Sequence record: LR756511.1
Length of the DNA stretch: 64,000 nt
Strand: one strand, 5' to 3'
The notes beneath the pieces are model-generated. The model saw only the letters and a list, made by a program, of their open reading frames with translations. It was not told the origin of the DNA and made no database searches. Of the stretch, positions 39,554 to 46,925 are shown piece after piece. Made by a program: the position numbers and the translations under genes. Each line of letters opens with the position of its first letter. Positions within the stretch are counted from its first letter, which is position 1.

Positions 39554-40063
39554 ATGCTAAATTTCAAGGATTACGTCGAGGAACCAACCCCAGGAGATTT
39601 CCTTTTACTGGTAAGACAACCAGTGCTAGAGGAAGTTGCCGATTCAACCAGATATAGCATTGAGGTTAATTTCCGAACAAAACCAGATGAGGCACTTGAC
39701 GCCTTCGCCAAAATTGCTCTTGGATACGTTTCGGCTGGTATGAAACAGCACAATTTCCATGTTAAGCATGTTTATACCGAAAAGCCTGTTAGAGTTTTGA
39801 TATCCAGCAGAAATTGGGATGATGGGGAATGGGTTGTTTTAGTCACCTGGAACGAACATCATAAATGCTTTGTTGTTTCTAAGGGATTCTACAATAAAGA
39901 CCGTGATACGGTAAGCGTTCAGTCTAGCGAACGATGCAAAGGGGATAATGCTTTTGAGATTACGAAACAGGTGTACAATATGTTACACGATTTAAAGGGT
40001 AAACCAGATCGCCACCTTGAAAAATTAAAGCCTGTTCCCCTCAAGAGAGGTCCAAAAACATGA
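39554..40063 (+). CDS. Putative internal virion protein
   Basis: MLNFKDYVEE CTS-like. Confidence 0.7.
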   Translation: MLNFKDYVEEPTPGDFLLLVRQPVLEEVADSTRYSIEVNFRTKPDEALDAFAKIALGYVSAGMKQHNFHVKHVYTEKPVRVLISSRNWDDGEWVVLVTWNEHHKCFVVSKGFYNKDRDTVSVQSSERCKGDNAFEITKQVYNMLHDLKGKPDRHLEKLKPVPLKRGPKT

Positions 40064-40467
40064 GTTTTCAGCAATGGCTAGAAAACAAGGGTGAATTTCA
40101 ACCGTTATACTTCGGCTGTGCCAATGATGATGTTGGACATTATGTTCAGGACATGAACGGAAGGCGTGAAGGTCGTTTGCGCAGCACCAATCCAAATGCT
40201 CATTTTTTGATTAACCACGATGGGCAACTAACGCCTAAAGATTCATACAAGCCCTATCAGGCTATTCTTCATCATTTCCCTCAATTCTCAGTATTAGCCT
40301 TTTGGGATAATACGGTCGATAGTCGTCCAGGTTCTAACTCAATGTTCTTGTTACCACCAGGAATTTCAGAACAAGAAGCATTAAATATGTCGGCACAATC
40401 TTTTCCTCACATATGGCAAAGATTTAAAACACCTATTAGTGTGATAAGAGTAGAGGAACATAAATGA
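40060..40467 (+). CDS. Putative internal virion protein
   Basis: MSFQQWLE CTS-like; ATGA coupling. Confidence 0.65.
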   Translation: MSFQQWLENKGEFQPLYFGCANDDVGHYVQDMNGRREGRLRSTNPNAHFLINHDGQLTPKDSYKPYQAILHHFPQFSVLAFWDNTVDSRPGSNSMFLLPPGISEQEALNMSAQSFPHIWQRFKTPISVIRVEEHK

Positions 40468-40877
40468 GGCGCGCGGCGGGCATTCTATACACTGACGGGA
40501 AGAAAATACTTCTTTTAAAACGTTCCGATGAAGTAAACAGCCCTGGAAAGTGGGCGTTTGTTGGCGGCAAGGTTGAAGATGGGGAGGACTGGTTAACTGC
40601 CGCCAAAAGGGAAAGTGAAGAAGAAATAGGCACCTGTCAAGGTGCTAAAATTGCCGAATTTCAAGTTGATAATGACTTTAAGACATTTATCTTTAAAGTT
40701 GATAAGCCATTCAAGTGCAAGCTAAACAAAGAACACGATAAATATGAATGGGTTCCACTTGACGAAGTGACCGAATATAAATTGCATCATCGCTTTAAAG
40801 ATGAATGGTCGCGCTACTTGCTAGCTATTGAAAGACATAACCATTCATTTAAAGAATGGTTGTCACAGCGCATCTAA
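40464..40877 (+). CDS. NUDIX hydrolase
   Basis: GGKVEDGEDWLTAAKRESEEEIG Nudix box. Confidence 0.92.
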   Translation: MRRAAGILYTDGKKILLLKRSDEVNSPGKWAFVGGKVEDGEDWLTAAKRESEEEIGTCQGAKIAEFQVDNDFKTFIFKVDKPFKCKLNKEHDKYEWVPLDEVTEYKLHHRFKDEWSRYLLAIERHNHSFKEWLSQRI

Positions 40878-41468
40878 TGCCGCTTCCAAGTCTTCAAAAA
40901 TTGCTTCCTTAGCTTTATCGCCCGCCCGCAAGCCGTAACTTGGATGATACGTAACTGTAACTTTTGCTTTTACGTGCGCGTCTTCATAGTCAAACCATTT
41001 CCCCCGAATATGACCAACAGGCTGATCTATCTTGAGCAAATACTTCATTGCTGACGCGCCCATACAGATAATGAGCTTAGGGTTTATGATTTTAATTTGT
41101 GCTTTTAAATAAGGTTCACAATTTTTAGCTTCTTCTGGCTTGGGCACTCGATTATTCGGTGGGCGGCACTTTAAGATATTACAGATATAAACTTCATCAC
41201 GTCCAACACCAACTGCCTTGAGAATATTGGTAAGAAGCTGTCCTGCTTTGCCTACAAAAGCTTCGCCTTCCTTATCTTCGTCTTCTCCTGGCGCTTCTCC
41301 AAGTAGCATAACCTTGGAATTAGGATTGCCTCCCTTCCCTAACTGACAGTCTTCTTCGTAATTGATGTTGTTGAATACAATTTGCGTTCTGCTGGCAACC
41401 AACTCTGGACATTTTGTACATTTGCATACTTTGTCTCTTACCAATTTAAGCATTTCTAGCTTGGTCAT
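40863..41468 (-). CDS. Uracil-DNA glycosylase family 4 (5' end supplied by the integrated element)
   Basis: CxxC, GEAPG, FVGKAG, NILKCRPP, YHPS; start re-called at 41468. Confidence 0.9.
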   Translation of the reverse strand: MTKLEMLKLVRDKVCKCTKCPELVASRTQIVFNNINYEEDCQLGKGGNPNSKVMLLGEAPGEDEDKEGEAFVGKAGQLLTNILKAVGVGRDEVYICNILKCRPPNNRVPKPEEAKNCEPYLKAQIKIINPKLIICMGASAMKYLLKIDQPVGHIRGKWFDYEDAHVKAKVTVTYHPSYGLRAGDKAKEAIFEDLEAALDAL

Positions 41469-41473
41469 TTTGG

Positions 41474-41719
41474 TTATTCCTGTTTGAATGGTTTGCCATC
41501 GTCTTCTTTCCATAAACGCCCATTCAAGAACACATATTCTGTTCCCAACTGAACGAATGCCTCATCACCAACAGGATTGAAGTATCGTGTAATGACATTG
41601 GGTGAAGCAACAGGACCATTGAAGGTTTGAGTAACCTTCACTTCCTGAGACACATAAAGTTTGTCTTTGTTGCCATCTGCGTCCACTATTGGAATAATTC
41701 TTAGTTCATTTGCCTTCAT
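41474..41719 (-). CDS. Hypothetical protein, 81 aa (element cargo)
   Basis: GGAGGG RBS. Confidence 0.65.
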   Translation of the reverse strand: MKANELRIIPIVDADGNKDKLYVSQEVKVTQTFNGPVASPNVITRYFNPVGDEAFVQLGTEYVFLNGRLWKEDDGKPFKQE

Positions 41720-41729
41720 TTGTCCCTCC

Positions 41730-42365
41730 TTATGCTGCCGCCGTTTTGAACTTGAAAGGAGGGCAAATTAACTCCAAAAAGTTCTTTCGAGCGTAAAAAG
41801 CTCTTGTAATCGATCCGTATCCTGCACCCTTTGTGCGGGCCTGGATATATTGACCATCACGACTGGTTAAGGCACCAAAGCCCTGTGTCTTCAACTTGTG
41901 ACGGATAAATTCGTAGTCCTTCTCAAGGTCTTTAATGAGATTATCTTCCTCAAGCAAATCAAATGTCGTCACCTTGAGAAGATGTGACATTGGATTGTTC
42001 CGACCATGCCAAGAGACTACGCAGAAAAGGAGACTCTTTAATTTCGCCCACAAATGGCTATCTAAAAACTCATCCCTGATTAAGTCTTCGGGATTGACCA
42101 TCGTGATAGCCATAGTTTCCTTTGGCACCCACAAGCCATCCTTTTCACAGAATGCCACTGATTTCAATTCATATCCAAGTCCATTTGGTGCCTTGCGGTT
42201 ATTGGGTGTAATGCCAGCCAGAGCTTCCAATCCAAGCCCTTTCCATCCTTTGTTAATCTTGCCGCTCTCACCAATTACGGTGATGCCTTGATTTTCTGCC
42301 AGAGGACGCAAATCACGACCTACATACTTCTCCAGCGTATCAACAGCGTGCCATCGAGTAAGCAT
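41730..42365 (-). CDS. MutH/Sau3AI-family endonuclease
   Basis: KGWKG..LE, PNG.GYELKS, KETMAIT, YIQARTKG, RAFYAR. Confidence 0.78.
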   Translation of the reverse strand: MLTRWHAVDTLEKYVGRDLRPLAENQGITVIGESGKINKGWKGLGLEALAGITPNNRKAPNGLGYELKSVAFCEKDGLWVPKETMAITMVNPEDLIRDEFLDSHLWAKLKSLLFCVVSWHGRNNPMSHLLKVTTFDLLEEDNLIKDLEKDYEFIRHKLKTQGFGALTSRDGQYIQARTKGAGYGSITRAFYARKNFLELICPPFKFKTAAA

Positions 42366-42389
42366 TACGAGCTTCCTTTGTAGTGAAAG

Positions 42390-43373
42390 TTATGCAGATT
42401 GGACATTTTTCTGTTTCTGAAACACCGCAACAATTTCTTCAACAGGATTGCGTTTATCTGTCTTGGCACTGATAGTGCGAGACACTTCGATTTTGCATAC
42501 CTTACCATTGTGCAGGTCTTGATATATCTGCTTCGAGTACCAGTTGTAATGATTTGAAATAACTACCGTCGCACCTTTTTCGGCAGCTTCCTCGGCACAC
42601 TTCGCCAAATCAATCTGGTCCTTTAGGCCAAAACCGACTTCGGCATAATCACTAAAATTAGCCGAAGCAGACAGTGGCATATACGGCGGATCGCAATATA
42701 CCACATCACCAGACTTCACCATTTTAAAAATCTCTCGGAAATCCTGGCTGTGCATTTGGAACTTTTTGACTATCTCCATGCAGCCATTGAATTCTTTTTC
42801 TGGAAAATATGGTTTCGTATATCTTCCAAACGGCACATTGAACTCGCCGCTCGCATTGTATCGGCATAATCCATTGAAGCAGTGTCGGTTCATGTATATA
42901 AACAACATTGCCTTGCGATATTTGTCTTTGGTAGAGTTAAACTCTTTTCGGAATTCATAGAAAACGTCCTCAGTGTTGTTTTTTGGAATAAACAAATTTT
43001 TCGCTTCTTCTATGAAGTTTGGCCCATCTGTCTTGAGAAACTTCCAAACCGATATTAAATCGTCATTGAAATCATTGACGATATATTCTGGATATGCCAC
43101 ATTAAGAGCAACGGAACCCGCACCAAGAAACGGCTCGATATATCGCCCACCGTTTTTGGGGAATTTCTTTTTAAGCGTATCTACTAATCGCAGTTTACCC
43201 CCAGCCCACTTTAGAAATGGCTTAGTATTATGCCCATTATCAACAACTTCTTCCTCAGCAGTTTCATCTGTTAAATTCTCTATATTCATTTTCCTCCTAA
43301 TATCGGACAGTTTGATACTTATTTTTGCCTTCGGCTTCTTTTTATGAGTAGGCTTATTTTTGCTTAACGACAT
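42390..43373 (-). CDS. dam: DNA adenine methyltransferase (Dam family)
   Basis: PFLKWAGGK, EPFLGAGSV, NRHCFNGLCRYN..G.FNVPFG, DPPY. Confidence 0.92.
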   Translation of the reverse strand: MSLSKNKPTHKKKPKAKISIKLSDIRRKMNIENLTDETAEEEVVDNGHNTKPFLKWAGGKLRLVDTLKKKFPKNGGRYIEPFLGAGSVALNVAYPEYIVNDFNDDLISVWKFLKTDGPNFIEEAKNLFIPKNNTEDVFYEFRKEFNSTKDKYRKAMLFIYMNRHCFNGLCRYNASGEFNVPFGRYTKPYFPEKEFNGCMEIVKKFQMHSQDFREIFKMVKSGDVVYCDPPYMPLSASANFSDYAEVGFGLKDQIDLAKCAEEAAEKGATVVISNHYNWYSKQIYQDLHNGKVCKIEVSRTISAKTDKRNPVEEIVAVFQKQKNVQSA

Positions 43374-43430
43374 TTCTACACCTATAGAACACACTTCACA
43401 TTCACCAATGCCACAGACACGATAATACCT

Positions 43431-45485
43431 TTATATAACTTTTTGGTCAACAGCCGTCGCAAGAAATTGTCCCTTTGTGTTTCTTTTGATGCTGGCAACC
43501 TTTTGTTTCTTGCTTTCAGATACCTTCCGACGAGTTTCCTCAGACATTGATTTGCCAAGGCGACAGTTACGCCGCCCATTGTATTTTTCGTTTATTGTTT
43601 CAAACTCTTTTGAGTCCAATACTTGTTTTGGAATAAAAGGATTGACTGAATTTATCTCGACACGACAGACTTTACAGTTGTTGTTTTTCTTACTGTTATC
43701 AAAGTAAAGAGTAACACCTTTGAGGTAAGGGCGTAGCAACATTGCTTTCTCTTCGCCAGTTGCTTGCATTACATCTTTAGAAAGACTCTGTATAGTCGAA
43801 GCTATTTCTAACAAGTGTTGCTTGCACCGCCGATATTCAGGAACTAAAGATACCAAGTTAGCTTCTAGCAACTCAATTTCACTCTGCTTCCCTTTAATGA
43901 ATTCCTTTATATCAGGGTCGTCCATATCAATAAATTTTAAAATCAATTTTTGTTTCTCTGCCTTCAACTCGGCAACTTTATTTCTTACCGATTGACTATT
44001 TTCATCAAATATCTCTTGATATATGACTTCAAAGTAATCATCACCGACAGCCGCCGTATATTTTCGCTTTTTAAAATTTTCCACCTTCTCATCATGCGTG
44101 TCGCCAGGAAGATGAGACAAAATGAACTGATACATCTTCTGAGCGACTTCTCCGCAAAACTCATGGGCGTTAGAAGATTTCACCTTTTCACATAGAGAAA
44201 TATAATTTTGGCATAACCAATTATTGAGCCAGTTGTCAATTATTTCGTGAATAACATCAGCTTTTATAGCCCCGCACTTCTCGCACCTATAGTTCTTGGA
44301 GGGCTTCCATTTAGTGCTATTGGCAATATAAAGAATATCTTGACAATTACCGCAGAATAAAAAGCACTTTGCCCAAAAATCACCAAGGTTGGCACGGCGA
44401 AGACGTTTATATCCAGTTTGATTACTTCGTAAATATTTATTTACTCGGTCCCAATGTGCAACATCTACAATTCGTATTGCCGCTCGCTCTTCTTCGGTCA
44501 ATGATATGGAGATTATATCCGTGGTTAATCGAGTTGTTTTTGCTTTTGAAGTCTGATTATCAACTGGATACCCTTTATATATCGGATTTGATAAAATGCA
44601 CTTTATTGTTTTTGCTTCCCAGCGTGTGCCAATGCTTTTAACACTTGTATTATTGAATATACAGGCAATTTCGTGAGGAGTTTTGTAATTAGGAGCATCT
44701 GCCAATTTAAATATATCTTTTACAATCTCGGCACGCTCAATATTAACAATCTCGGTTTTACGGTCGCCTTTTTCCATCACAGGAACAGATGTAAGTAATA
44801 CCCAATTATGCCCATCTTGAACCCAACGATCATGATATGGTTCTCTTTTTCCGTCAGGATATTCTTTCCACCGCATTAAAGCATAATTGGCACGACTTCG
44901 GGTATTTTTTGGAGGGTCAGTCCAGTGCCGTCCATCGCATTTTTTGTAACCGTCATAAATTACTTTATATTTAAAAATACCTTCACGATTATATACGATC
45001 CAATCGTAACCATAAGCACACATTTTGCCAGGACTTGATTTTTTCTCGATAGTTTTCCGCCGTGCAATTTGAGTTCTGTATCCCTTCTTCTCAATTTCGG
45101 CAGATGAAGCCAATTGATTTTGCACTGTCCGCATAGTCGAAGCGAGGTCAGTCATATCAACCACCTGTTCATCGTTGGCGGTGATAATTTTCATATTCAG
45201 TTGTTTCAAGGAGGTAATGAAGAAACCAATTTCGGCAGGATTCTTGAACCCTATTCTATCATGGTCACGGTAAATAACATACTCTGGTTTTGTAACTTTG
45301 AGTTTAGAAATTAAGTTATTTGCCTCATCGAGCATATCCCAGCGAGGCACGCCGTTCAAGGTTATTTCTCCAACCATGTCCCAACCCATCTTCTTAATGA
45401 ATGGGTCTATCACCATGTCTTGATTGGTTAGTTCCAGTGGATCAGAAACATTGGATTTCCGTCTTATTTTAACACAAGTGGTCAT
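43431..45485 (-). CDS. Large serine recombinase with C-terminal NUMOD3 motif
   Basis: N-terminal RKS, RDHDRIG, AYGY, recombinase domain W...TI..ILSNP.Y.G, CGNC/CEKC zinc ribbon, coiled coil, GKSMSEETRRKVSESKK; AGGAG RBS. Confidence 0.8.
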   Translation of the reverse strand: MTTCVKIRRKSNVSDPLELTNQDMVIDPFIKKMGWDMVGEITLNGVPRWDMLDEANNLISKLKVTKPEYVIYRDHDRIGFKNPAEIGFFITSLKQLNMKIITANDEQVVDMTDLASTMRTVQNQLASSAEIEKKGYRTQIARRKTIEKKSSPGKMCAYGYDWIVYNREGIFKYKVIYDGYKKCDGRHWTDPPKNTRSRANYALMRWKEYPDGKREPYHDRWVQDGHNWVLLTSVPVMEKGDRKTEIVNIERAEIVKDIFKLADAPNYKTPHEIACIFNNTSVKSIGTRWEAKTIKCILSNPIYKGYPVDNQTSKAKTTRLTTDIISISLTEEERAAIRIVDVAHWDRVNKYLRSNQTGYKRLRRANLGDFWAKCFLFCGNCQDILYIANSTKWKPSKNYRCEKCGAIKADVIHEIIDNWLNNWLCQNYISLCEKVKSSNAHEFCGEVAQKMYQFILSHLPGDTHDEKVENFKKRKYTAAVGDDYFEVIYQEIFDENSQSVRNKVAELKAEKQKLILKFIDMDDPDIKEFIKGKQSEIELLEANLVSLVPEYRRCKQHLLEIASTIQSLSKDVMQATGEEKAMLLRPYLKGVTLYFDNSKKNNNCKVCRVEINSVNPFIPKQVLDSKEFETINEKYNGRRNCRLGKSMSEETRRKVSESKKQKVASIKRNTKGQFLATAVDQKVI

Positions 45486-45649
45486 ATCTCCTGATTTTCC
45501 TTCTTCTAGTAAATGACGCCTCTGCATTATATAGAGTGTCAGTTACAGAATTTTGAAAGAAAATTCCGAAAATATTTTGACCGAGGAAAAGATGTGTGGA
45601 GAGGGAGAAATAGGGCTTGAAATGCCTAATGCGGGAGTTGTATAGTCAG

Positions 45650-45679
45650 AAAAAGAAAAACCGTCCAAGAAGGACGGTT
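45650..45679 (-). terminator. Terminator just inside the element boundary
   Basis: AACCGTCC-TTCTT-GGACGGTT followed by U tract. Confidence 0.75.
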
Positions 45680-45800
45680 AATTAGAGAAATTAGGATTGC
45701 CGCTGTCGAACACGGTTTGAGTTCTGTAATCGACTAGCTCAGGGCATTGTGTGCAATTACAGATTTTTTGTTTTAGGGTATCAAGTAATTCTAATTTCAT
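45678..45800 (-). pseudogene. Orphaned 5' fragment of the UDG gene, 40 aa (not in ORF track)
   Basis: MKLELLDTLKQKICNCTQCPELVDYRTQTVFDSGNPN aligns with the UDG N-terminus MTKLEML..KVCKCTKCPELV.SRTQIVF...GNPN. Confidence 0.85.
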
Positions 45801-46003
45801 AATTCATCTGGCTCATCTGGCTTCCAACCTTTCGGCTTCCAGTAATTTACTGGATCATCAGCGTCAAAAGTAGTTTCATCCTTTTTGAGCTTGGTTCCTA
45901 ATATTCTAATCATTTTATAAGCTAAAATATTGGTAAATATTAAGCAGAATCCGACGCCAATGAAGAATCCTGCAATCATGCCCATGATAAAGTCTTGAGT
46001 CAT
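45797..46003 (-). CDS. Small membrane protein
   Basis: One TM helix; ATGA coupled to the UDG fragment. Confidence 0.6.
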   Translation of the reverse strand: MTQDFIMGMIAGFFIGVGFCLIFTNILAYKMIRILGTKLKKDETTFDADDPVNYWKPKGWKPDEPDEL

Positions 46004-46011
46004 GGCCTTAT

Positions 46012-46821
46012 CTAGCTCGCAAGTAATGGTTCTTCGCCAAAAAACAACACTCGGTCACGGTTCACGACCGTCTTGAGCGGCGGCATATCATATCTAACAA
46101 ATTCGTTTCTTTCAATAGGAGCATCTGATGCCACCTTTCTCCACTTCTCAGGGATTTTACTCAAATCAGGAACACGCCGAACTTTCTTCCTAATAATAAA
46201 AGTTCCGCGTTTGAAGAAGGCAGGATAATCATTCCAATTAATGCCCTTTTCAGAAAAGAGCATTTCTTGAATCTGTGACCCTTTTTTCTTGTGCAATTGA
46301 TTGTGCGAGAAATATGCCTGCCCCGCCATCTGTACACTGTTGCGAGATGCGTCCATCTCTCTCCATAAGAACATATTAGTCGCTTCGCCTATATTGGGTA
46401 GATTAAATACCCTGCAATCAAAACACGCTTCCATTTTGCTTTTTTCAGGAATGTGCTGTGGTAATAGCCGATTGAACTTAACGGATAGCTTAGCGGCTAG
46501 GTGAGAATTGAATTTTTGCACTCGGCCATTGCAGAACATTTCGCTTTCGTAGTCTTCCAGGTTCCATCCCAAACTGATTTCATCGCTTTGTGTGTATGCG
46601 CAATTGGCATTGAATTCAAATGCCATATGCTCGGCAAGAATGACCATTAGATCAGATAATCTTTTGTCGTAAGGTCTTTGCAAATTTTTACAAAAGCTGT
46701 GAAAGCAAATTCCGTCCATACGAGCATAGACGGGCAGCATCGGCATAAGCCGCCGTGAAGTTTCGAAACTCTCGTAGAGCTTCATTCGGTCGCCAAAGCT
46801 ATCTTTTTTCATGACGATCAT
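46012..46821 (-). CDS. tRNA(His) guanylyltransferase Thg1-like protein
   Basis: FGDRMK.YE, RMDG..FH.F, RPYD, YTQSDEIS, FDCR, WRE.DA.RNS; start 46821 or 46812. Confidence 0.9.
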   Translation of the reverse strand: MIVMKKDSFGDRMKLYESFETSRRLMPMLPVYARMDGICFHSFCKNLQRPYDKRLSDLMVILAEHMAFEFNANCAYTQSDEISLGWNLEDYESEMFCNGRVQKFNSHLAAKLSVKFNRLLPQHIPEKSKMEACFDCRVFNLPNIGEATNMFLWREMDASRNSVQMAGQAYFSHNQLHKKKGSQIQEMLFSEKGINWNDYPAFFKRGTFIIRKKVRRVPDLSKIPEKWRKVASDAPIERNEFVRYDMPPLKTVVNRDRVLFFGEEPLLAS

Positions 46822-46925
46822 TTTCACTTTGTTGTTTAAAAATTGCAAGTCCAAATCCAAAAAAATGTTGCACTTATTAGTAATCTTTACTATCATTAAT
46901 TTAAATCGTTACAGTAGGTGATATA

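What the first reader, a model, noticed from the sequence alone, without database searches (positions are those of the whole stretch)
41318..45800. Hidden integrative element inside the phage: serine recombinase + Dam + MutH-like nuclease inserted in the UDG gene and repairing it
Seen: an unannotated 40-aa ORF (45800-45678) is a UDG family 4 N-terminus ending at GNPN. The intact UDG (41468-40863) has a diverged N-terminus with an extra segment (NNINYEEDCQLGKG). The 13-bp sequence GGCAATCCTAATT (minus strand) occurs at both GNPN codons (45701-45689 and 41330-41318) as a direct repeat. Between them lie a terminator, the LSR, Dam, a MutH/Sau3AI-like nuclease and an 81-aa ORF. Recombination between the cores would excise a 4371-bp circle and restore an in-frame canonical UDG (RTQTVFDSGNPNSKVMLLGEAPG). 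Known: integrative elements often carry replacement target-gene fragments, and LSRs catalyse attP x attB exchange. Inference: a phage-parasitic methylase-endonuclease islet with its att sites readable from the sequence, and a potentially new LSR/att pair.
Basis: partly seen in the sequence, partly recalled or inferred. Interest (0 to 1): 0.85.

Follow-up and report, generated by a model that had tools for sequence, protein, structure and literature searches.

The report
Serine-recombinase islet inside a huge phage
A 4.4-kb mobile element with its own serine integrase sits inside the uracil-DNA-glycosylase gene of a 595-kb bacteriophage and patches that gene with a spare front end. It belongs to a small, previously undescribed family that has entered distantly related huge phages at exactly the same codon, each time carrying a DNA-methylase cargo with a partner gene.

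Summary

**What is in the window.** The window is part of LR756511.1, an uncultured 595-kb phage. Window 41328-45698 is a 4371-bp element, all on the minus strand. It holds a terminator, a divergent large serine recombinase (LSR), a Dam-type methylase, a MutH/Sau3AI-family nuclease, a conserved 81-aa ORF and a replacement UDG 5' end. It lies between a 40-aa UDG N-terminal remnant and the resident UDG body.

**Comparative evidence.**
- At least five further complete elements (L001/L003, L006, L010, L011, L012), plus partial or decayed copies, sit at the same Asn codon of the UDG 'GNP' motif in other huge-phage contigs.
- Related phages with the same synteny have an uninterrupted canonical UDG, that is, an empty site.
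- In L010 the two junctions share only the dinucleotide AA.
- The reconstructed attP has its dyad-symmetry peak on that AA in all six elements.
- Element proteins are 74-89% identical between copies, while host proteins are 47-57%.
- Occupied UDGs are polyphyletic (AU test p = 5e-6).
- Most elements lack CCGG although their flanks do not.

**Not shown.** Present-day activity, the excised circle and the directionality factor are untested. The 81-aa ORF is only a candidate for the last.

**Verdict.** This is a new variant of a known kind: an LSR integrative element whose host replicon is a phage.

The parts
45678..45800 (-). Remnant of the phage's original UDG 5' end (N1, 40 aa). It ends GNPN, followed by 3 element-encoded codons (FSN) and a stop. 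Its ATG overlaps the stop of the upstream 68-aa TM ORF.
   Evidence: It is 66% identical to the N-termini of the empty-site UDGs P0002 and P0003, against 50-53% for the element-borne N2.
45672..45723 (-). Upstream junction (attL): host B arm, then the AA crossover at 45698-45697, then the element P' arm (TCCTAATTTCTCTAATTAACCGTCC).
   Evidence: The P' arm is conserved in L001, L004, L005, L006, L010, L011 and L012.
45659..45679 (-). Intrinsic-terminator hairpin (AACCGTCC-TTCTT-GGACGGTT followed by a T run) at the element's upstream end. It would stop transcription arriving from the phage side.
   Evidence: dG -13.1 kcal/mol, z -4.85. The same hairpin is present in L004 and L005.
45486..45560 (-). 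Conserved LSR upstream region with a TATAAT box at 45531-45526.
   Evidence: The same ...CTCTATATAAKG... block lies upstream of the LSR in L001, L002, L005 and L006. Promoter function is inferred.
43431..45485 (-). Large serine recombinase, 684 aa. Features are R9-x-S11, D74/R77, the recombinase domain, a 4-Cys zinc ribbon (C378, C381, C401, C404) and a long coiled coil.
   Evidence: Pfam Recombinase 3e-9. Pfam Resolvase only E=0.002, below its cut-off. AF2 model at pLDDT 70.5. Foldseek top hits are full-length serine integrases at E 2e-15 and the TP901-1 catalytic domain at TM 0.69. Alignment A3.
42390..43394 (-). Cargo: Dam-family (D12 class) N6-adenine DNA methyltransferase.
   Evidence: Pfam 6e-63. 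TIGR00571 5e-87, above its cut-off. PADLOC MTase_II / orphan MTase.
41730..42365 (-). Cargo: small MutH/Sau3AI-family endonuclease, the probable restriction partner of the methylase.
   Evidence: Pfam MutH 4.5e-9. NCBIfam Sau3AI 3e-13 and MutH 2e-10, both far below their equivalog cut-offs. PADLOC REase_II 3e-11. E. coli MutH structures at 3.5e-7. More than 1400 homologues, paired with methylases in a bacterium and in another phage.
41474..41719 (-). orf81: conserved core gene of the element and candidate recombination directionality factor.
   Evidence: 79-89% identical in six elements, and immediately upstream of the replacement UDG 5' end in five of them; in L010 a 125-aa ORF lies between. 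Found only with the element in IMG/VR. Predicted all-beta, with no family or fold match.
41328..41468 (-). Element-borne replacement UDG 5' end (N2). It encodes the CxxC motif, RTQIVF and the extra NINYEEDCQLGKG loop, whose codons are the attP P arm.
   Evidence: N2 parts are 62-85% identical between copies, while the attached C-parts are 47-70%.
41301..41352 (-). Downstream junction (attR): element P arm (GACTGTCAGTTAGGGAAGGGAGGC), then the AA crossover at 41327-41326, then the host B' arm.
40863..41325 (-). Resident (phage) part of the UDG gene, from the GNP motif to the stop.
   Evidence: 75% identical to the empty-site UDG P0002 and no more than 54% to any other occupied UDG. Nested among 14 empty-site UDGs in the tree.
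45797..46896 (-). Phage flank: 68-aa TM ORF (45797-46003) and Thg1-like tRNA-His guanylyltransferase (46012-46896). These are the conserved upstream neighbours of UDG in empty-site relatives.

Best explanation
Window 41328-45698 is a site-specific integrative element that lives in huge-phage genomes.

**How it entered (inferred from anatomy and comparison).** Its large serine recombinase joined an element attP to an attB that lies inside the phage's family-4 UDG gene. attP is about 50 bp and is an imperfect inverted repeat centred on the dinucleotide AA. The crossover fell on the AA of the Asn codon in the conserved G-N-P motif.

**How the gene is kept working.**
- An insertion there would cut off the first 37 codons of UDG.
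- The element therefore carries its own UDG 5' end, with start codon, CxxC and RTQIVF.
- That 5' end has a 13-residue extra loop, and the loop's codons double as the attP P arm.
- The integrated state thus encodes a chimeric but complete UDG at the end of the element's gene string.
- The original 5' end is left as a 40-aa stub closed by an element-borne stop and terminator.

**Core and cargo.** LSR, orf81 and the replacement 5' end form the conserved core. The genes between them are exchangeable cargo, and every complete element that carries cargo has a D12 adenine methylase plus a partner gene. In this copy the cargo is Dam plus a MutH/Sau3AI-type nuclease.

**Inferred functions.**
- The cargo is probably a GATC restriction-modification pair that protects methylated element-bearing genomes and cuts unmethylated DNA.
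- Excision would need a directionality factor, for which orf81 is the best candidate.
- Excision would release a 4371-bp circle and restore a canonical 188-aa UDG.
For: **1. Same module, same nucleotide, different phages.**
- Complete elements occur in L001/L003, L006, L010, L011 and L012.
- Partial copies occur in L002, L005, L007 and L008, and L004 is a decayed copy.
- Each complete element has an N1 stub upstream and an N2-type UDG downstream.

**2. Empty sites.**
- The P0002 contig reads Thg1C / 65-aa ORF / canonical UDG / NUDIX / 169 aa / 100 aa / gp13, which is the window's order minus the islet.
- L009 and L051 are empty sites with DNA available.

**3. Crossover.**
- The identity shared by the two junctions is 13, 5, 5, 2, 8 and 5 bp in the six complete elements.
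- The only common core is AA, and in L010 it is AA alone.

**4. attP symmetry.** The reconstructed attP has its dyad-symmetry maximum exactly on AA in all six. Scores are 12-16 matches of 24, against a background mean of about 6.5.

**5. Chimeric UDG.**
- N2 parts average 73.6% identity and their C-parts 54.5%, with N2 higher than C in all 21 pairs.
- In uninterrupted UDGs the N part is the less conserved one, at 49% against 58%.

**6. Polyphyly.**
- The window's UDG body nests inside 14 empty-site UDGs with starred support.
- Occupancy needs 6 changes on the tree.
- The AU test rejects one clade, with dlnL 99 and p 5e-6.

**7. Element less diverged than its hosts.**
- LSR is 74-87% and orf81 79-89% identical in all pairs.
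- Thg1, UDG-C, the 169-aa protein and gp13-like are 47-57% between the window and other occupied phages.
- Those host proteins are 68-70% identical to the empty-site L009.

**8. Composition.**
- The elements in L001, L006 and L011 have 0 CCGG, against Markov expectations of 5.1, 8.9 and 4.8.
- Their flanks have 36, 35 and 15 CCGG sites.
- Element GC is 0.37-0.40, against 0.41-0.45 for the whole loci.

**9. The enzyme is an LSR.**
- Pfam Recombinase matches, and the AF2 model hits full-length serine integrases at E 2e-15.
- R-x-S, D..R and four Cys are invariant or nearly so.

**10. Where the LSR clade is found.**
- It is rare: 8 proteins among 5.8e9, and 21 of 1.84e9 representatives at E<1e-30.
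- It is absent from 185,579 species genomes.
- Among GenBank phages it is present only in this genome.
Against: - **No excised form.** Only IMG/VR could be scanned for the attP junction, and it gave 0 hits. No reads were available.
- **No proof of recent movement.** No two host phages share a near-identical element. The best LSR pair is 87% identical.
- **Atypical catalytic domain.**
  - It scores below Pfam's Resolvase threshold, at 18.7 bits against a cut-off of 23.3.
  - The position of resolvase Arg71 is an invariant Phe. Neighbouring LSR clades lack that Arg too.
- **orf81 is unsupported beyond its position.** It has no detectable similarity to any known protein or fold.
- **Closest empty site has no DNA.** The P0002 contig is known only from its gene table.
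- **Some copies do not restore UDG.**
  - In L012 and L002 the LSR is inverted and the UDG lacks its CxxC N-terminus, so restoration is not universal.
  - In L001/L003 the UDG is frameshifted.
Confidence: 0.85

Rival explanations
1. Fixed relic or domesticated module. The element did enter by LSR recombination, but this copy no longer moves. It is kept because the phage now depends on the chimeric UDG and benefits from the methylase-nuclease pair, and the LSR is idle or does another job.
For: - No circle or attP junction was found.
- Copies differ by at least 13% in the LSR, so no recent transfer is documented.
- Decayed and rearranged copies exist: L004 is truncated, and L012 and L002 have the LSR inverted.
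- The LSR lacks the Arg71 equivalent.
Against: - In the window the LSR, orf81, both att arms and the N1 stub are all intact.
- The catalytic domain has only 10 differences in its first 150 residues between the window and L001.
- The N1 stub is as similar to empty-site N-termini as a functional gene part would be. It is 66% identical, against 75% for the C part, and N-terminal parts normally run about 9 points lower than C parts. That argues for a recent insertion or for ongoing cycling.
- The window's nearest relatives are empty sites.
Confidence: 0.2
2. Programmed switch. The LSR excises the islet at a set stage of infection, as the skin and SPbeta elements are excised in Bacillus. This would swap UDG expression from element control to phage control, or shed the RM genes. 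On this view it is a regulatory device, not a parasite.
For: - The integrated state puts UDG behind the element's genes and behind a terminator.
- The excised state would couple UDG again to the upstream TM ORF, whose stop overlaps the stub's ATG.
Against: - Both states encode a complete UDG, so nothing is switched on or off.
- Close relatives live without the element.
- The cargo differs between copies.
- The polyphyletic distribution fits horizontal spread better than a conserved developmental device.
Confidence: 0.08
3. Cassette moved by homologous recombination between co-infecting phages. The duplicated UDG 5' ends would be a by-product, and the LSR an irrelevant passenger.
For: - Phage islands are often exchanged through flanking homology.
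- The window's two junctions share 13 bp.
Against: - In L010 the junctions share only 2 bp, and in L001, L006 and L012 only 5 bp.
- The flanks of the repeat are unrelated in sequence.
- The join falls at the same dinucleotide in all copies.
- The reconstructed attP is dyad-symmetric around that dinucleotide.
Confidence: 0.03

Closest known systems
Serine-integrase prophages and islands that insert into protein-coding genes: SPbeta/SprA in spsM, the skin element/SpoIVCA in sigK, A118 in comK, SCCmec/CcrAB at rlmH, and Vibrio PLE with its LSR and a phage-supplied RDF. (From my own knowledge; PLE is also mentioned in PMC11795197.)
   Same: - The LSR has a catalytic domain, a recombinase domain and a zinc ribbon with coiled coil.
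- The att sites are short and dyad-symmetric with a 2-bp crossover.
- Insertion is inside a coding sequence.
- Excision is expected to need a separate directionality factor.
   Different: - The target replicon is a phage genome, not a bacterial chromosome.
- The element is only 2.4-5.2 kb and has no replication, packaging or transfer genes.
- It repairs the target gene by supplying a new 5' end.
- The LSR is 11-15% identical to solved LSRs and forms a rare clade of its own.
Integrating elements that carry a substitute end of their target gene: tRNA-gene integrating islands, and phage 21 and e14 in icd. (From my own knowledge.)
   Same: A duplicated, diverged piece of the target gene at one element end keeps the gene intact after insertion. 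The displaced original piece remains as a stub at the other end.
   Different: - Those use tyrosine integrases and replace the 3' end. Here a serine integrase is used and the 5' end is replaced, including the start codon and an Fe-S cysteine pair.
- As a result, expression of the gene passes to the element.
- The attP arm is written into an extra protein loop.
Mobile type II restriction-modification units, on the view of RM systems as selfish elements. (From my own knowledge.)
   Same: - A methylase gene sits next to a small nuclease gene.
- The same nuclease family is paired with methylases in a bacterial chromosome and in another phage.
- The cargo differs from copy to copy.
   Different: - Here the RM unit rides on a dedicated site-specific vehicle inside phages.
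- Nuclease activity and GATC specificity are not shown.
- The nuclease family has Asn at the position of MutH Asp70.
Selfish elements already known inside virus genomes: homing-endonuclease genes, introns and inteins in phages, and integrated virophages and transpovirons in giant viruses. (From my own knowledge.)
   Same: They are parasites of a virus genome that target conserved genes and leave the gene functional. Spread is expected during co-infection.
   Different: - Here there is no splicing and no homing double-strand break.
- Movement is by conservative site-specific recombination at a defined att pair.

Membership tests
Large serine recombinase (serine integrase) | N-terminal resolvase-type catalytic domain with a serine nucleophile after strand 1 | tested here: met
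   - The motif IRRKS (R9, S11) is nearly invariant in alignment A3.
- The AF2 model has the beta-alpha topology plus a long helix E.
- The TP901-1 catalytic domain matches at TM 0.69, and gamma-delta and Tn3 resolvases also match.
- The Pfam Resolvase hit is only E=0.002 at 18.7 bits, below its 23.3-bit cut-off.
Large serine recombinase (serine integrase) | Full set of active-site residues (resolvase R8, D67, R68, R71) | tested here: inconclusive
   R9, D74 and R77 are present. The R71 position is an invariant Phe, in the motif DRIGF. Neighbouring LSR clades read DRFGTK or QRIGTF and also lack this Arg. It is therefore a clade trait, not decay. Its effect on catalysis is untested.
Large serine recombinase (serine integrase) | Recombinase domain (PF07508) | tested here: met
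   E 3.3e-9 at 37.4 bits, above the 21.1-bit cut-off. PHROG 95 'integrase' at 3e-28.
Large serine recombinase (serine integrase) | Zinc-ribbon domain with an embedded coiled coil | tested here: met
   - Four invariant Cys: C378, C381, C401 and C404.
- The Pfam Zn_ribbon_recom hit is weak, at E=0.099.
- The model has long helices across residues 409-572.
- Full-length alignments to serine-integrase cryo-EM structures 9dxd, 9y66 and 9rah at E 1e-12 to 2e-15.
Large serine recombinase (serine integrase) | attP and attB of about 40-50 bp that are different from each other, each an imperfect inverted repeat round a 2-bp crossover | tested here: met
   - The reconstructed attP scores 12-16 of 24 symmetric positions at the AA centre in six elements, against a background of about 6.5.
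- attB scores are weaker, at 9-12.
- The junctions share as little as AA.
Large serine recombinase (serine integrase) | Catalyses attP x attB recombination, with reversal only in the presence of an RDF | not testable with these tools
   This needs a recombination assay. orf81 is a candidate RDF by position and co-conservation only.
Integrative mobile element (genomic islet) | Presence/absence polymorphism at a defined site (empty sites in relatives) | tested here: met
   The P0002 contig, L009 and L051 have an uninterrupted UDG in the same neighbourhood.
Integrative mobile element (genomic islet) | Element history differs from host history | tested here: met
   - The AU test rejects a single clade of occupied UDGs, at p 5e-6.
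- Element proteins are 74-89% identical, against 47-57% for host proteins.
- CCGG-free elements sit in CCGG-containing flanks.
Integrative mobile element (genomic islet) | Excised circular form or attP junction observed | tested here: not met
   A degenerate attP pattern found nothing in IMG/VR. The larger metagenome collection could not be scanned again, and no reads were available. The test is therefore weak.
Type II restriction-modification system (GATC type) | Dam-family methyltransferase | tested here: met
   TIGR00571 at 292 bits, above its 114.85-bit cut-off. Pfam D12 at 6e-63.
Type II restriction-modification system (GATC type) | Active nuclease with a PD-(D/E)XK catalytic set, and GATC specificity | tested here: inconclusive
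   - MutH/Sau3AI homology is present.
- E47, E66 and K68 are conserved, but the MutH D70 position is Asn throughout this family of more than 1400 members.
- Scores are far below the NCBIfam equivalog cut-offs.
- Specificity was not tested.
Family 4 uracil-DNA glycosylase (the chimeric gene) | UDG_fam4 profile, the GEAPG and HPS motifs, and four Fe-S cysteines | tested here: met
   TIGR00758 at 188 bits, above its 125.3-bit cut-off. The motifs and cysteines are visible in alignment A2. Enzyme activity of the chimera with its 13-residue insertion was not tested.

The most novel reading that the evidence does not exclude
These islets are hyperparasites of huge phages that spread during co-infection by 'site-specific homing'.

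- **Spread.** The LSR inserts an excised circle into the conserved G-N-P codon of any naive phage's UDG gene.
- **Weapon.** The methylase-nuclease cargo destroys unmethylated, element-free rival genomes. It would then act as both an addiction module and a drive.
- **Directionality.** orf81 is a new type of directionality factor.
- **Target immunity.** UDG alleles that read G-S-P, as in L009 where the centre is AG instead of AA, are escape variants.
Probability: 0.35. Interest if true: 0.9.

Novelty: new variant of a known kind. Interest (0 to 1): 0.8.

Why it matters
**A new kind of host for a known machine.** Site-specific integrative elements are textbook parasites of bacterial chromosomes. 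Six full-text literature searches found no description of a family that uses a phage genome as its chromosome. If confirmed, huge phages carry their own layer of integrating mobile DNA. That DNA brings in methylase-nuclease pairs that could decide contests between co-infecting phages.

**A compact new recombinase system.**
- The LSR is far from all characterised ones.
- Its attP and attB can be read directly from natural junctions, with a defined AA crossover.
- An obvious candidate directionality factor lies next to it.
- All three are testable in E. coli, and serine integrases are of interest as genome-engineering tools.

**An unusual design.** The element writes its attP arm into an extra loop of the protein whose gene it repairs.

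Tried and rejected
- **Close relatives among deposited phages.** The only DNA match in 50,697 records is the source genome, and protein matches elsewhere are marginal.
- **Sequence search of the LSR against solved structures.** It gave nothing meaningful. The link to LSRs came only from the Pfam Recombinase domain and the predicted fold.
- **UDG single-sequence scan of IMG/VR.** No relatives were found.
- **attP-junction pattern in IMG/VR.** 0 hits.
- **LSR profile scan of 185,579 species genomes.** Only generic LSR fragments at 22-43% identity turned up, so a bacterial home for the element was not supported.
- **orf81.**
  - No hit passing threshold in Pfam, PHROGs, NCBIfam or PADLOC.
  - The AF2 model is only moderately confident, and Foldseek found nothing below E 0.27.
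- **Intron, intein or homing endonuclease.** Rejected. The gene is not spliced but rebuilt from a second 5' end, and no endonuclease of those kinds is present.
- **The phage's own lysogeny integrase.** Rejected. The two att sites lie 4.4 kb apart in the same genome, relatives lack the segment, and the LSR clade is absent from bacterial genomes.
- **Assembly artefact.** Rejected. The same architecture was assembled independently in at least eight projects.
- **Asn-for-Asp in the nuclease as decay of this copy.** Rejected. It is invariant across the family.

Full report
**Origin and observation.**

The window matches LR756511.1 at 100% identity. This is an unannotated 595,163-bp 'uncultured phage' record, and no other deposited phage is similar at the DNA level.

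- The minus-strand 13-mer GGCAATCCTAATT occurs exactly twice, at 41318-41330 and 45689-45701.
- Upstream of the higher copy lies a 40-aa ORF (45678-45800) that is a family-4 UDG N-terminus.
- That ORF ends ...RTQTVFDSGNPN, followed by three foreign codons and a stop.
- The lower copy lies inside an intact 201-aa UDG (40863-41468). Its N-terminus carries an extra NINYEEDCQLGKG segment.
- Between the repeats, all on the minus strand:
  - a strong terminator hairpin;
  - a 684-aa recombinase;
  - a Dam-family methylase;
  - a MutH/Sau3AI-family protein;
  - an 81-aa ORF.
- Joining the flanks at the repeat removes 4371 bp and gives an in-frame 188-aa canonical UDG.

**More copies at the same codon.**

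Searches with the recombinase and with the UDG recovered the same module in other metagenomic phage contigs. Complete elements:

| Locus | Gene order inside the element |
|---|---|
| L001 / L003 (same phage, IMG/VR copy and metagenome copy) | LSR / D12 methylase / 221-aa ORF / orf80 / UDG |
| L006 | LSR / Dam / PDDEXK_11 nuclease / 260 aa / 64 aa / orf80 / UDG |
| L010 (277-kb contig) | Thg1 / 71 aa / [LSR / Dam / PDDEXK_11 / orf82 / 125 aa] / UDG |
| L011 | Thg1 / 49 aa / [LSR / 285 aa / D12 methylase / orf81] / UDG |
| L012 | LSR only, inverted between the two junctions |

- Partial copies are L002 (L012-type), L005 (upstream end), and L007 and L008 (downstream end).
- L004 is a decayed copy, also seen as L045 and L046. 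Its LSR is frameshifted and then truncated, and its stub is frameshifted.
- In every complete element a UDG N-terminal stub precedes the element and an N2-type UDG follows it.

**Empty sites.**

The closest homologue of the window's UDG is P0002, at 66% identity overall and 75% in the C part. It is a canonical 189-aa UDG.
- Its contig reads Thg1C / 65-aa ORF / UDG / NUDIX (opposite strand) / 169 aa / 100 aa / gp13.
- That is the window's gene order without the islet. The contig is known only from its gene table.
- L009 and L051 are further uninterrupted sites with DNA available.

**Where the crossover is.**

Aligning all junctions gives a clear pattern.
- Every upstream junction reads host sequence / GGN-AA / conserved element arm (...TTCTCTAATTAACCGTCC...).
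- Every downstream junction reads conserved element arm (GACNNTCAGTTRNNGAAGNNNGGN) / AA / host sequence.
- The identity shared by the two junctions of one element is 13 bp in the window, 8 bp in L011, 5 bp in L001, L006 and L012, and only AA in L010.
- When the element's two arms are joined, the resulting attP has its best dyad symmetry centred exactly on that AA in all six complete elements. The scores are 16, 15, 15, 14, 15 and 12 of 24 positions. Other centres average about 6.5, with maxima of 10-12.

A 2-bp crossover in an imperfectly palindromic site of about 50 bp is the hallmark of serine integrases. This last statement rests on established knowledge, summarised in PMC11795197 and PMC12286644.

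The window's 13-bp repeat is therefore real, but it is longer than the functional core. The extra identity reflects that attP itself looks like a UDG 'GNPN' sequence.

**The UDG is a chimera.**

- Among occupied genes the part before the crossover (N2) is 62-85% identical, with a mean of 73.6%.
- The part after the crossover is 47-70% identical, with a mean of 54.5%.
- N2 exceeds C in all 21 pairs.
- Among uninterrupted UDGs of similar divergence the N-terminal part is the less conserved one. It averages 49% against 58%, and N exceeds C in only 18% of 582 pairs.
- The window's stub N1 is 66% identical to the N-termini of P0002 and P0003. That is the value expected for the true partner of a C part that is 70-75% identical.
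- The window's N2 is only 50-53% identical to those N-termini.
- The extra loop of N2 (EEDCQLGKGG) is encoded by the attP P arm. The element has written its recombination site into a surface insertion of the protein it repairs. This follows from the sequence; the surface location is inferred.

**Horizontal history.**

- In a maximum-likelihood tree of UDG C parts, the window nests within a clade of 14 empty-site genes with starred support at five successive nodes.
- The other occupied genes lie elsewhere, and occupancy needs six changes on the tree.
- An AU test rejects a single clade of occupied genes, with dlnL 99.3 and p 5e-6.

| Comparison | Protein | Identity |
|---|---|---|
| Window vs other occupied phages | Thg1 | 47-51% |
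| Window vs other occupied phages | UDG-C | 49-54% |
| Window vs L001 | 169-aa protein | 56% |
| Window vs L001 | gp13-like protein | 57% |
| Window vs empty-site L009 | Thg1, UDG-C | 68-70% |
| All element pairs | LSR | 74-87% |
| All element pairs | orf81 | 79-89% |

Composition points the same way.
- The elements in L001, L006 and L011 contain no CCGG, against Markov expectations of 5.1, 8.9 and 4.8.
- Their flanks contain 36, 35 and 15 CCGG sites.
- Element GC is 0.37-0.40, against 0.41-0.45 for the whole loci.

The whole 64-kb window, islet included, has no CCGG at all, against 112 expected.

Together these results say that the element has moved between diverged phage lineages, or has been precisely lost many times. 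Precise loss would also need the recombinase.

**The recombinase.**

- Pfam finds the Recombinase domain.
- It finds only a sub-threshold Resolvase match, at E=0.002 and 18.7 bits against a cut-off of 23.3.
- A sequence search of the PDB finds nothing relevant.
- An AlphaFold2 model from a 10-sequence alignment has mean pLDDT 70.5. It shows a resolvase-type catalytic domain, a mixed recombinase domain, a zinc ribbon and long coiled-coil helices.
- Its best Foldseek matches are:
  - full-length serine integrase cryo-EM structures 9dxd, 9y66 and 9dxh, at E about 2e-15;
  - PhiC31 integrase, 9rah and 9tep;
  - 4bqq and 4kis;
  - the TP901-1 catalytic domain, at TM 0.69.
- All of these matches are at 11-15% sequence identity.
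- The alignment conserves R9-x-S11, D74, R77 and four Cys.
- The position of resolvase Arg71 is an invariant Phe. Neighbouring LSR clades lack this Arg too.

The clade is rare.
- Eight proteins were found by the word-indexed search of 5.8e9 sequences.
- 21 representatives of 1.84e9 score at E<1e-30.
- None occurs in 185,579 species-representative genomes.
- Among GenBank phages it occurs only in this genome.

The conserved start is MTTCVKIRRKS at 45485. The longer ORF start at 45527 overlaps a TATAAT box that is conserved upstream of the gene in other copies.

**Cargo and orf81.**

- Every complete element except the minimal L012 type carries a D12-class adenine methylase plus a partner gene.
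- In the window the methylase is a bona fide Dam-family enzyme.
- The partner belongs to a large bacterial family of small MutH/Sau3AI-type endonucleases.
- That family is paired with a methylase in an Ornithobacterium chromosome, and also in a T4-like phage contig without any LSR. This is consistent with a restriction-modification unit.
- Activity and GATC specificity are inferred. The family has Asn at the position of MutH Asp70.
- GATC is only mildly depleted in the window, at a ratio of 0.75.
- orf81 is the most conserved element protein, at 79-89% identity. It lies directly upstream of the replacement UDG 5' end in five of the six elements that carry it; in L010 a 125-aa ORF intervenes.
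- In IMG/VR it occurs only with the element.
- It is predicted to be a small all-beta protein with no family or fold match.
- Known RDFs share no common sequence or fold (PMC12286644, PMC11795197). Position and co-conservation therefore make orf81 a reasonable candidate, but an untested one.

**Mechanism, with its status.**

*Shown by sequence comparison:*
- insertion at a fixed dinucleotide within UDG;
- a dyad-symmetric attP;
- replacement of the gene's 5' end;
- the presence/absence polymorphism;
- element history that disagrees with host history.

*Inferred:*
- The LSR catalysed these insertions and can still do so.
- Excision needs orf81 or a phage factor, and yields a 4371-bp circle.
- Transfer happens between phages co-infecting one cell.
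- The methylase-nuclease cargo gives element-bearing genomes an advantage, or makes loss of the element costly.

*Counter-evidence:*
- No circle junction was found, though only IMG/VR could be scanned.
- No near-identical copies occur in different hosts.
- The catalytic domain is atypical.
- Several copies are decayed or rearranged, or their UDG is broken.

**Comparison with known systems and novelty.**

- The machinery is that of serine-integrase prophages and islands.
- The trick of carrying a substitute end of the target gene is known from tRNA-targeting islands and from phage 21 and e14 in icd. This is from my own knowledge.
- What is new is the combination:
  - the host replicon is a huge phage;
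  - the target is the phage's UDG gene;
  - the 5' end is replaced, and the attP arm is coded in an added protein loop;
  - the element is a 2.4-5.2 kb islet whose cargo is a methylase-nuclease pair;
  - the LSR clade is uncharacterised.
- Six full-text literature searches found no description of such elements, and a jumbo-phage comparative survey does not mention them.

I rate this a new variant of a known kind, with interest 0.8.

Noticed in passing
window 1-64000: The tetranucleotide CCGG is completely absent from the 64-kb window, against 112 expected. GGCC (ratio 0.38) and GTAC (ratio 0.52) are also depleted. The empty-site relative L009 likewise has 0 CCGG against 9 expected. This looks like strong restriction-site avoidance by this phage lineage.
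   Followed up: partly
L001:7816-12073; L006:4942-10143; L011:2815-7800: The elements themselves contain no CCGG, although their host flanks have 36, 35 and 15 sites. Element GC is also lower, at 0.37-0.38 against 0.41-0.45 for the whole loci. The element carries a compositional signature like that of the window's phage lineage.
   Followed up: partly
L012:8826-11256 and L002:1-2702: This is a minimal version of the element with both att junctions but only the LSR gene, and that gene is inverted relative to the att arms. The downstream UDG then lacks the CxxC N-terminus, so the gene is probably not restored.
   Followed up: partly
L001:12190-12250 (same in L003): The UDG downstream of this element is frameshifted in both copies of this phage, the IMG/VR contig and the metagenome contig. 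The target gene may therefore be decaying in this phage.
   Followed up: no
L004:7735-9540 (also L045, L046): This is a decayed copy. The UDG stub is frameshifted, the LSR is frameshifted and truncated near residue 410, a TnpB-like ORF lies just downstream on the opposite strand, and no UDG body follows.
   Followed up: partly
L009:8100-8112: This empty-site UDG reads G-S-P (GGA AGT CCT), so the position of the AA crossover is AG. A serine integrase needs matching central dinucleotides, so such alleles might be refractory to insertion. The empty site in L051 keeps AA.
   Followed up: no
window 41730-42365: The whole family of small MutH/Sau3AI-like endonucleases, with more than 1400 members, has an invariant Asn (motif APNGL..ELK) where E. 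coli MutH has the catalytic Asp70.
   Followed up: partly
L014:7892-9654: A D12 methylase plus MutH-like nuclease pair, 76% identical in the nuclease, sits in a T4-like phage contig with Gp23 capsid and prohead protease genes but without any LSR. The cargo pair therefore also travels by other routes.
   Followed up: no
window 45240-45260 (LSR residues 74-81): The LSR clade has DRIGF where resolvases have DRLGR, so the Arg71 equivalent is missing. More distant LSRs found by the profile search read DRFGTK or QRIGTF and lack it too.
   Followed up: partly
window 40060-40467: A 135-aa ORF lies between NUDIX and the 169-aa gene. It has no counterpart in the P0002 empty-site contig, where those two genes abut. 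This is a second small indel difference between the relatives.
   Followed up: no
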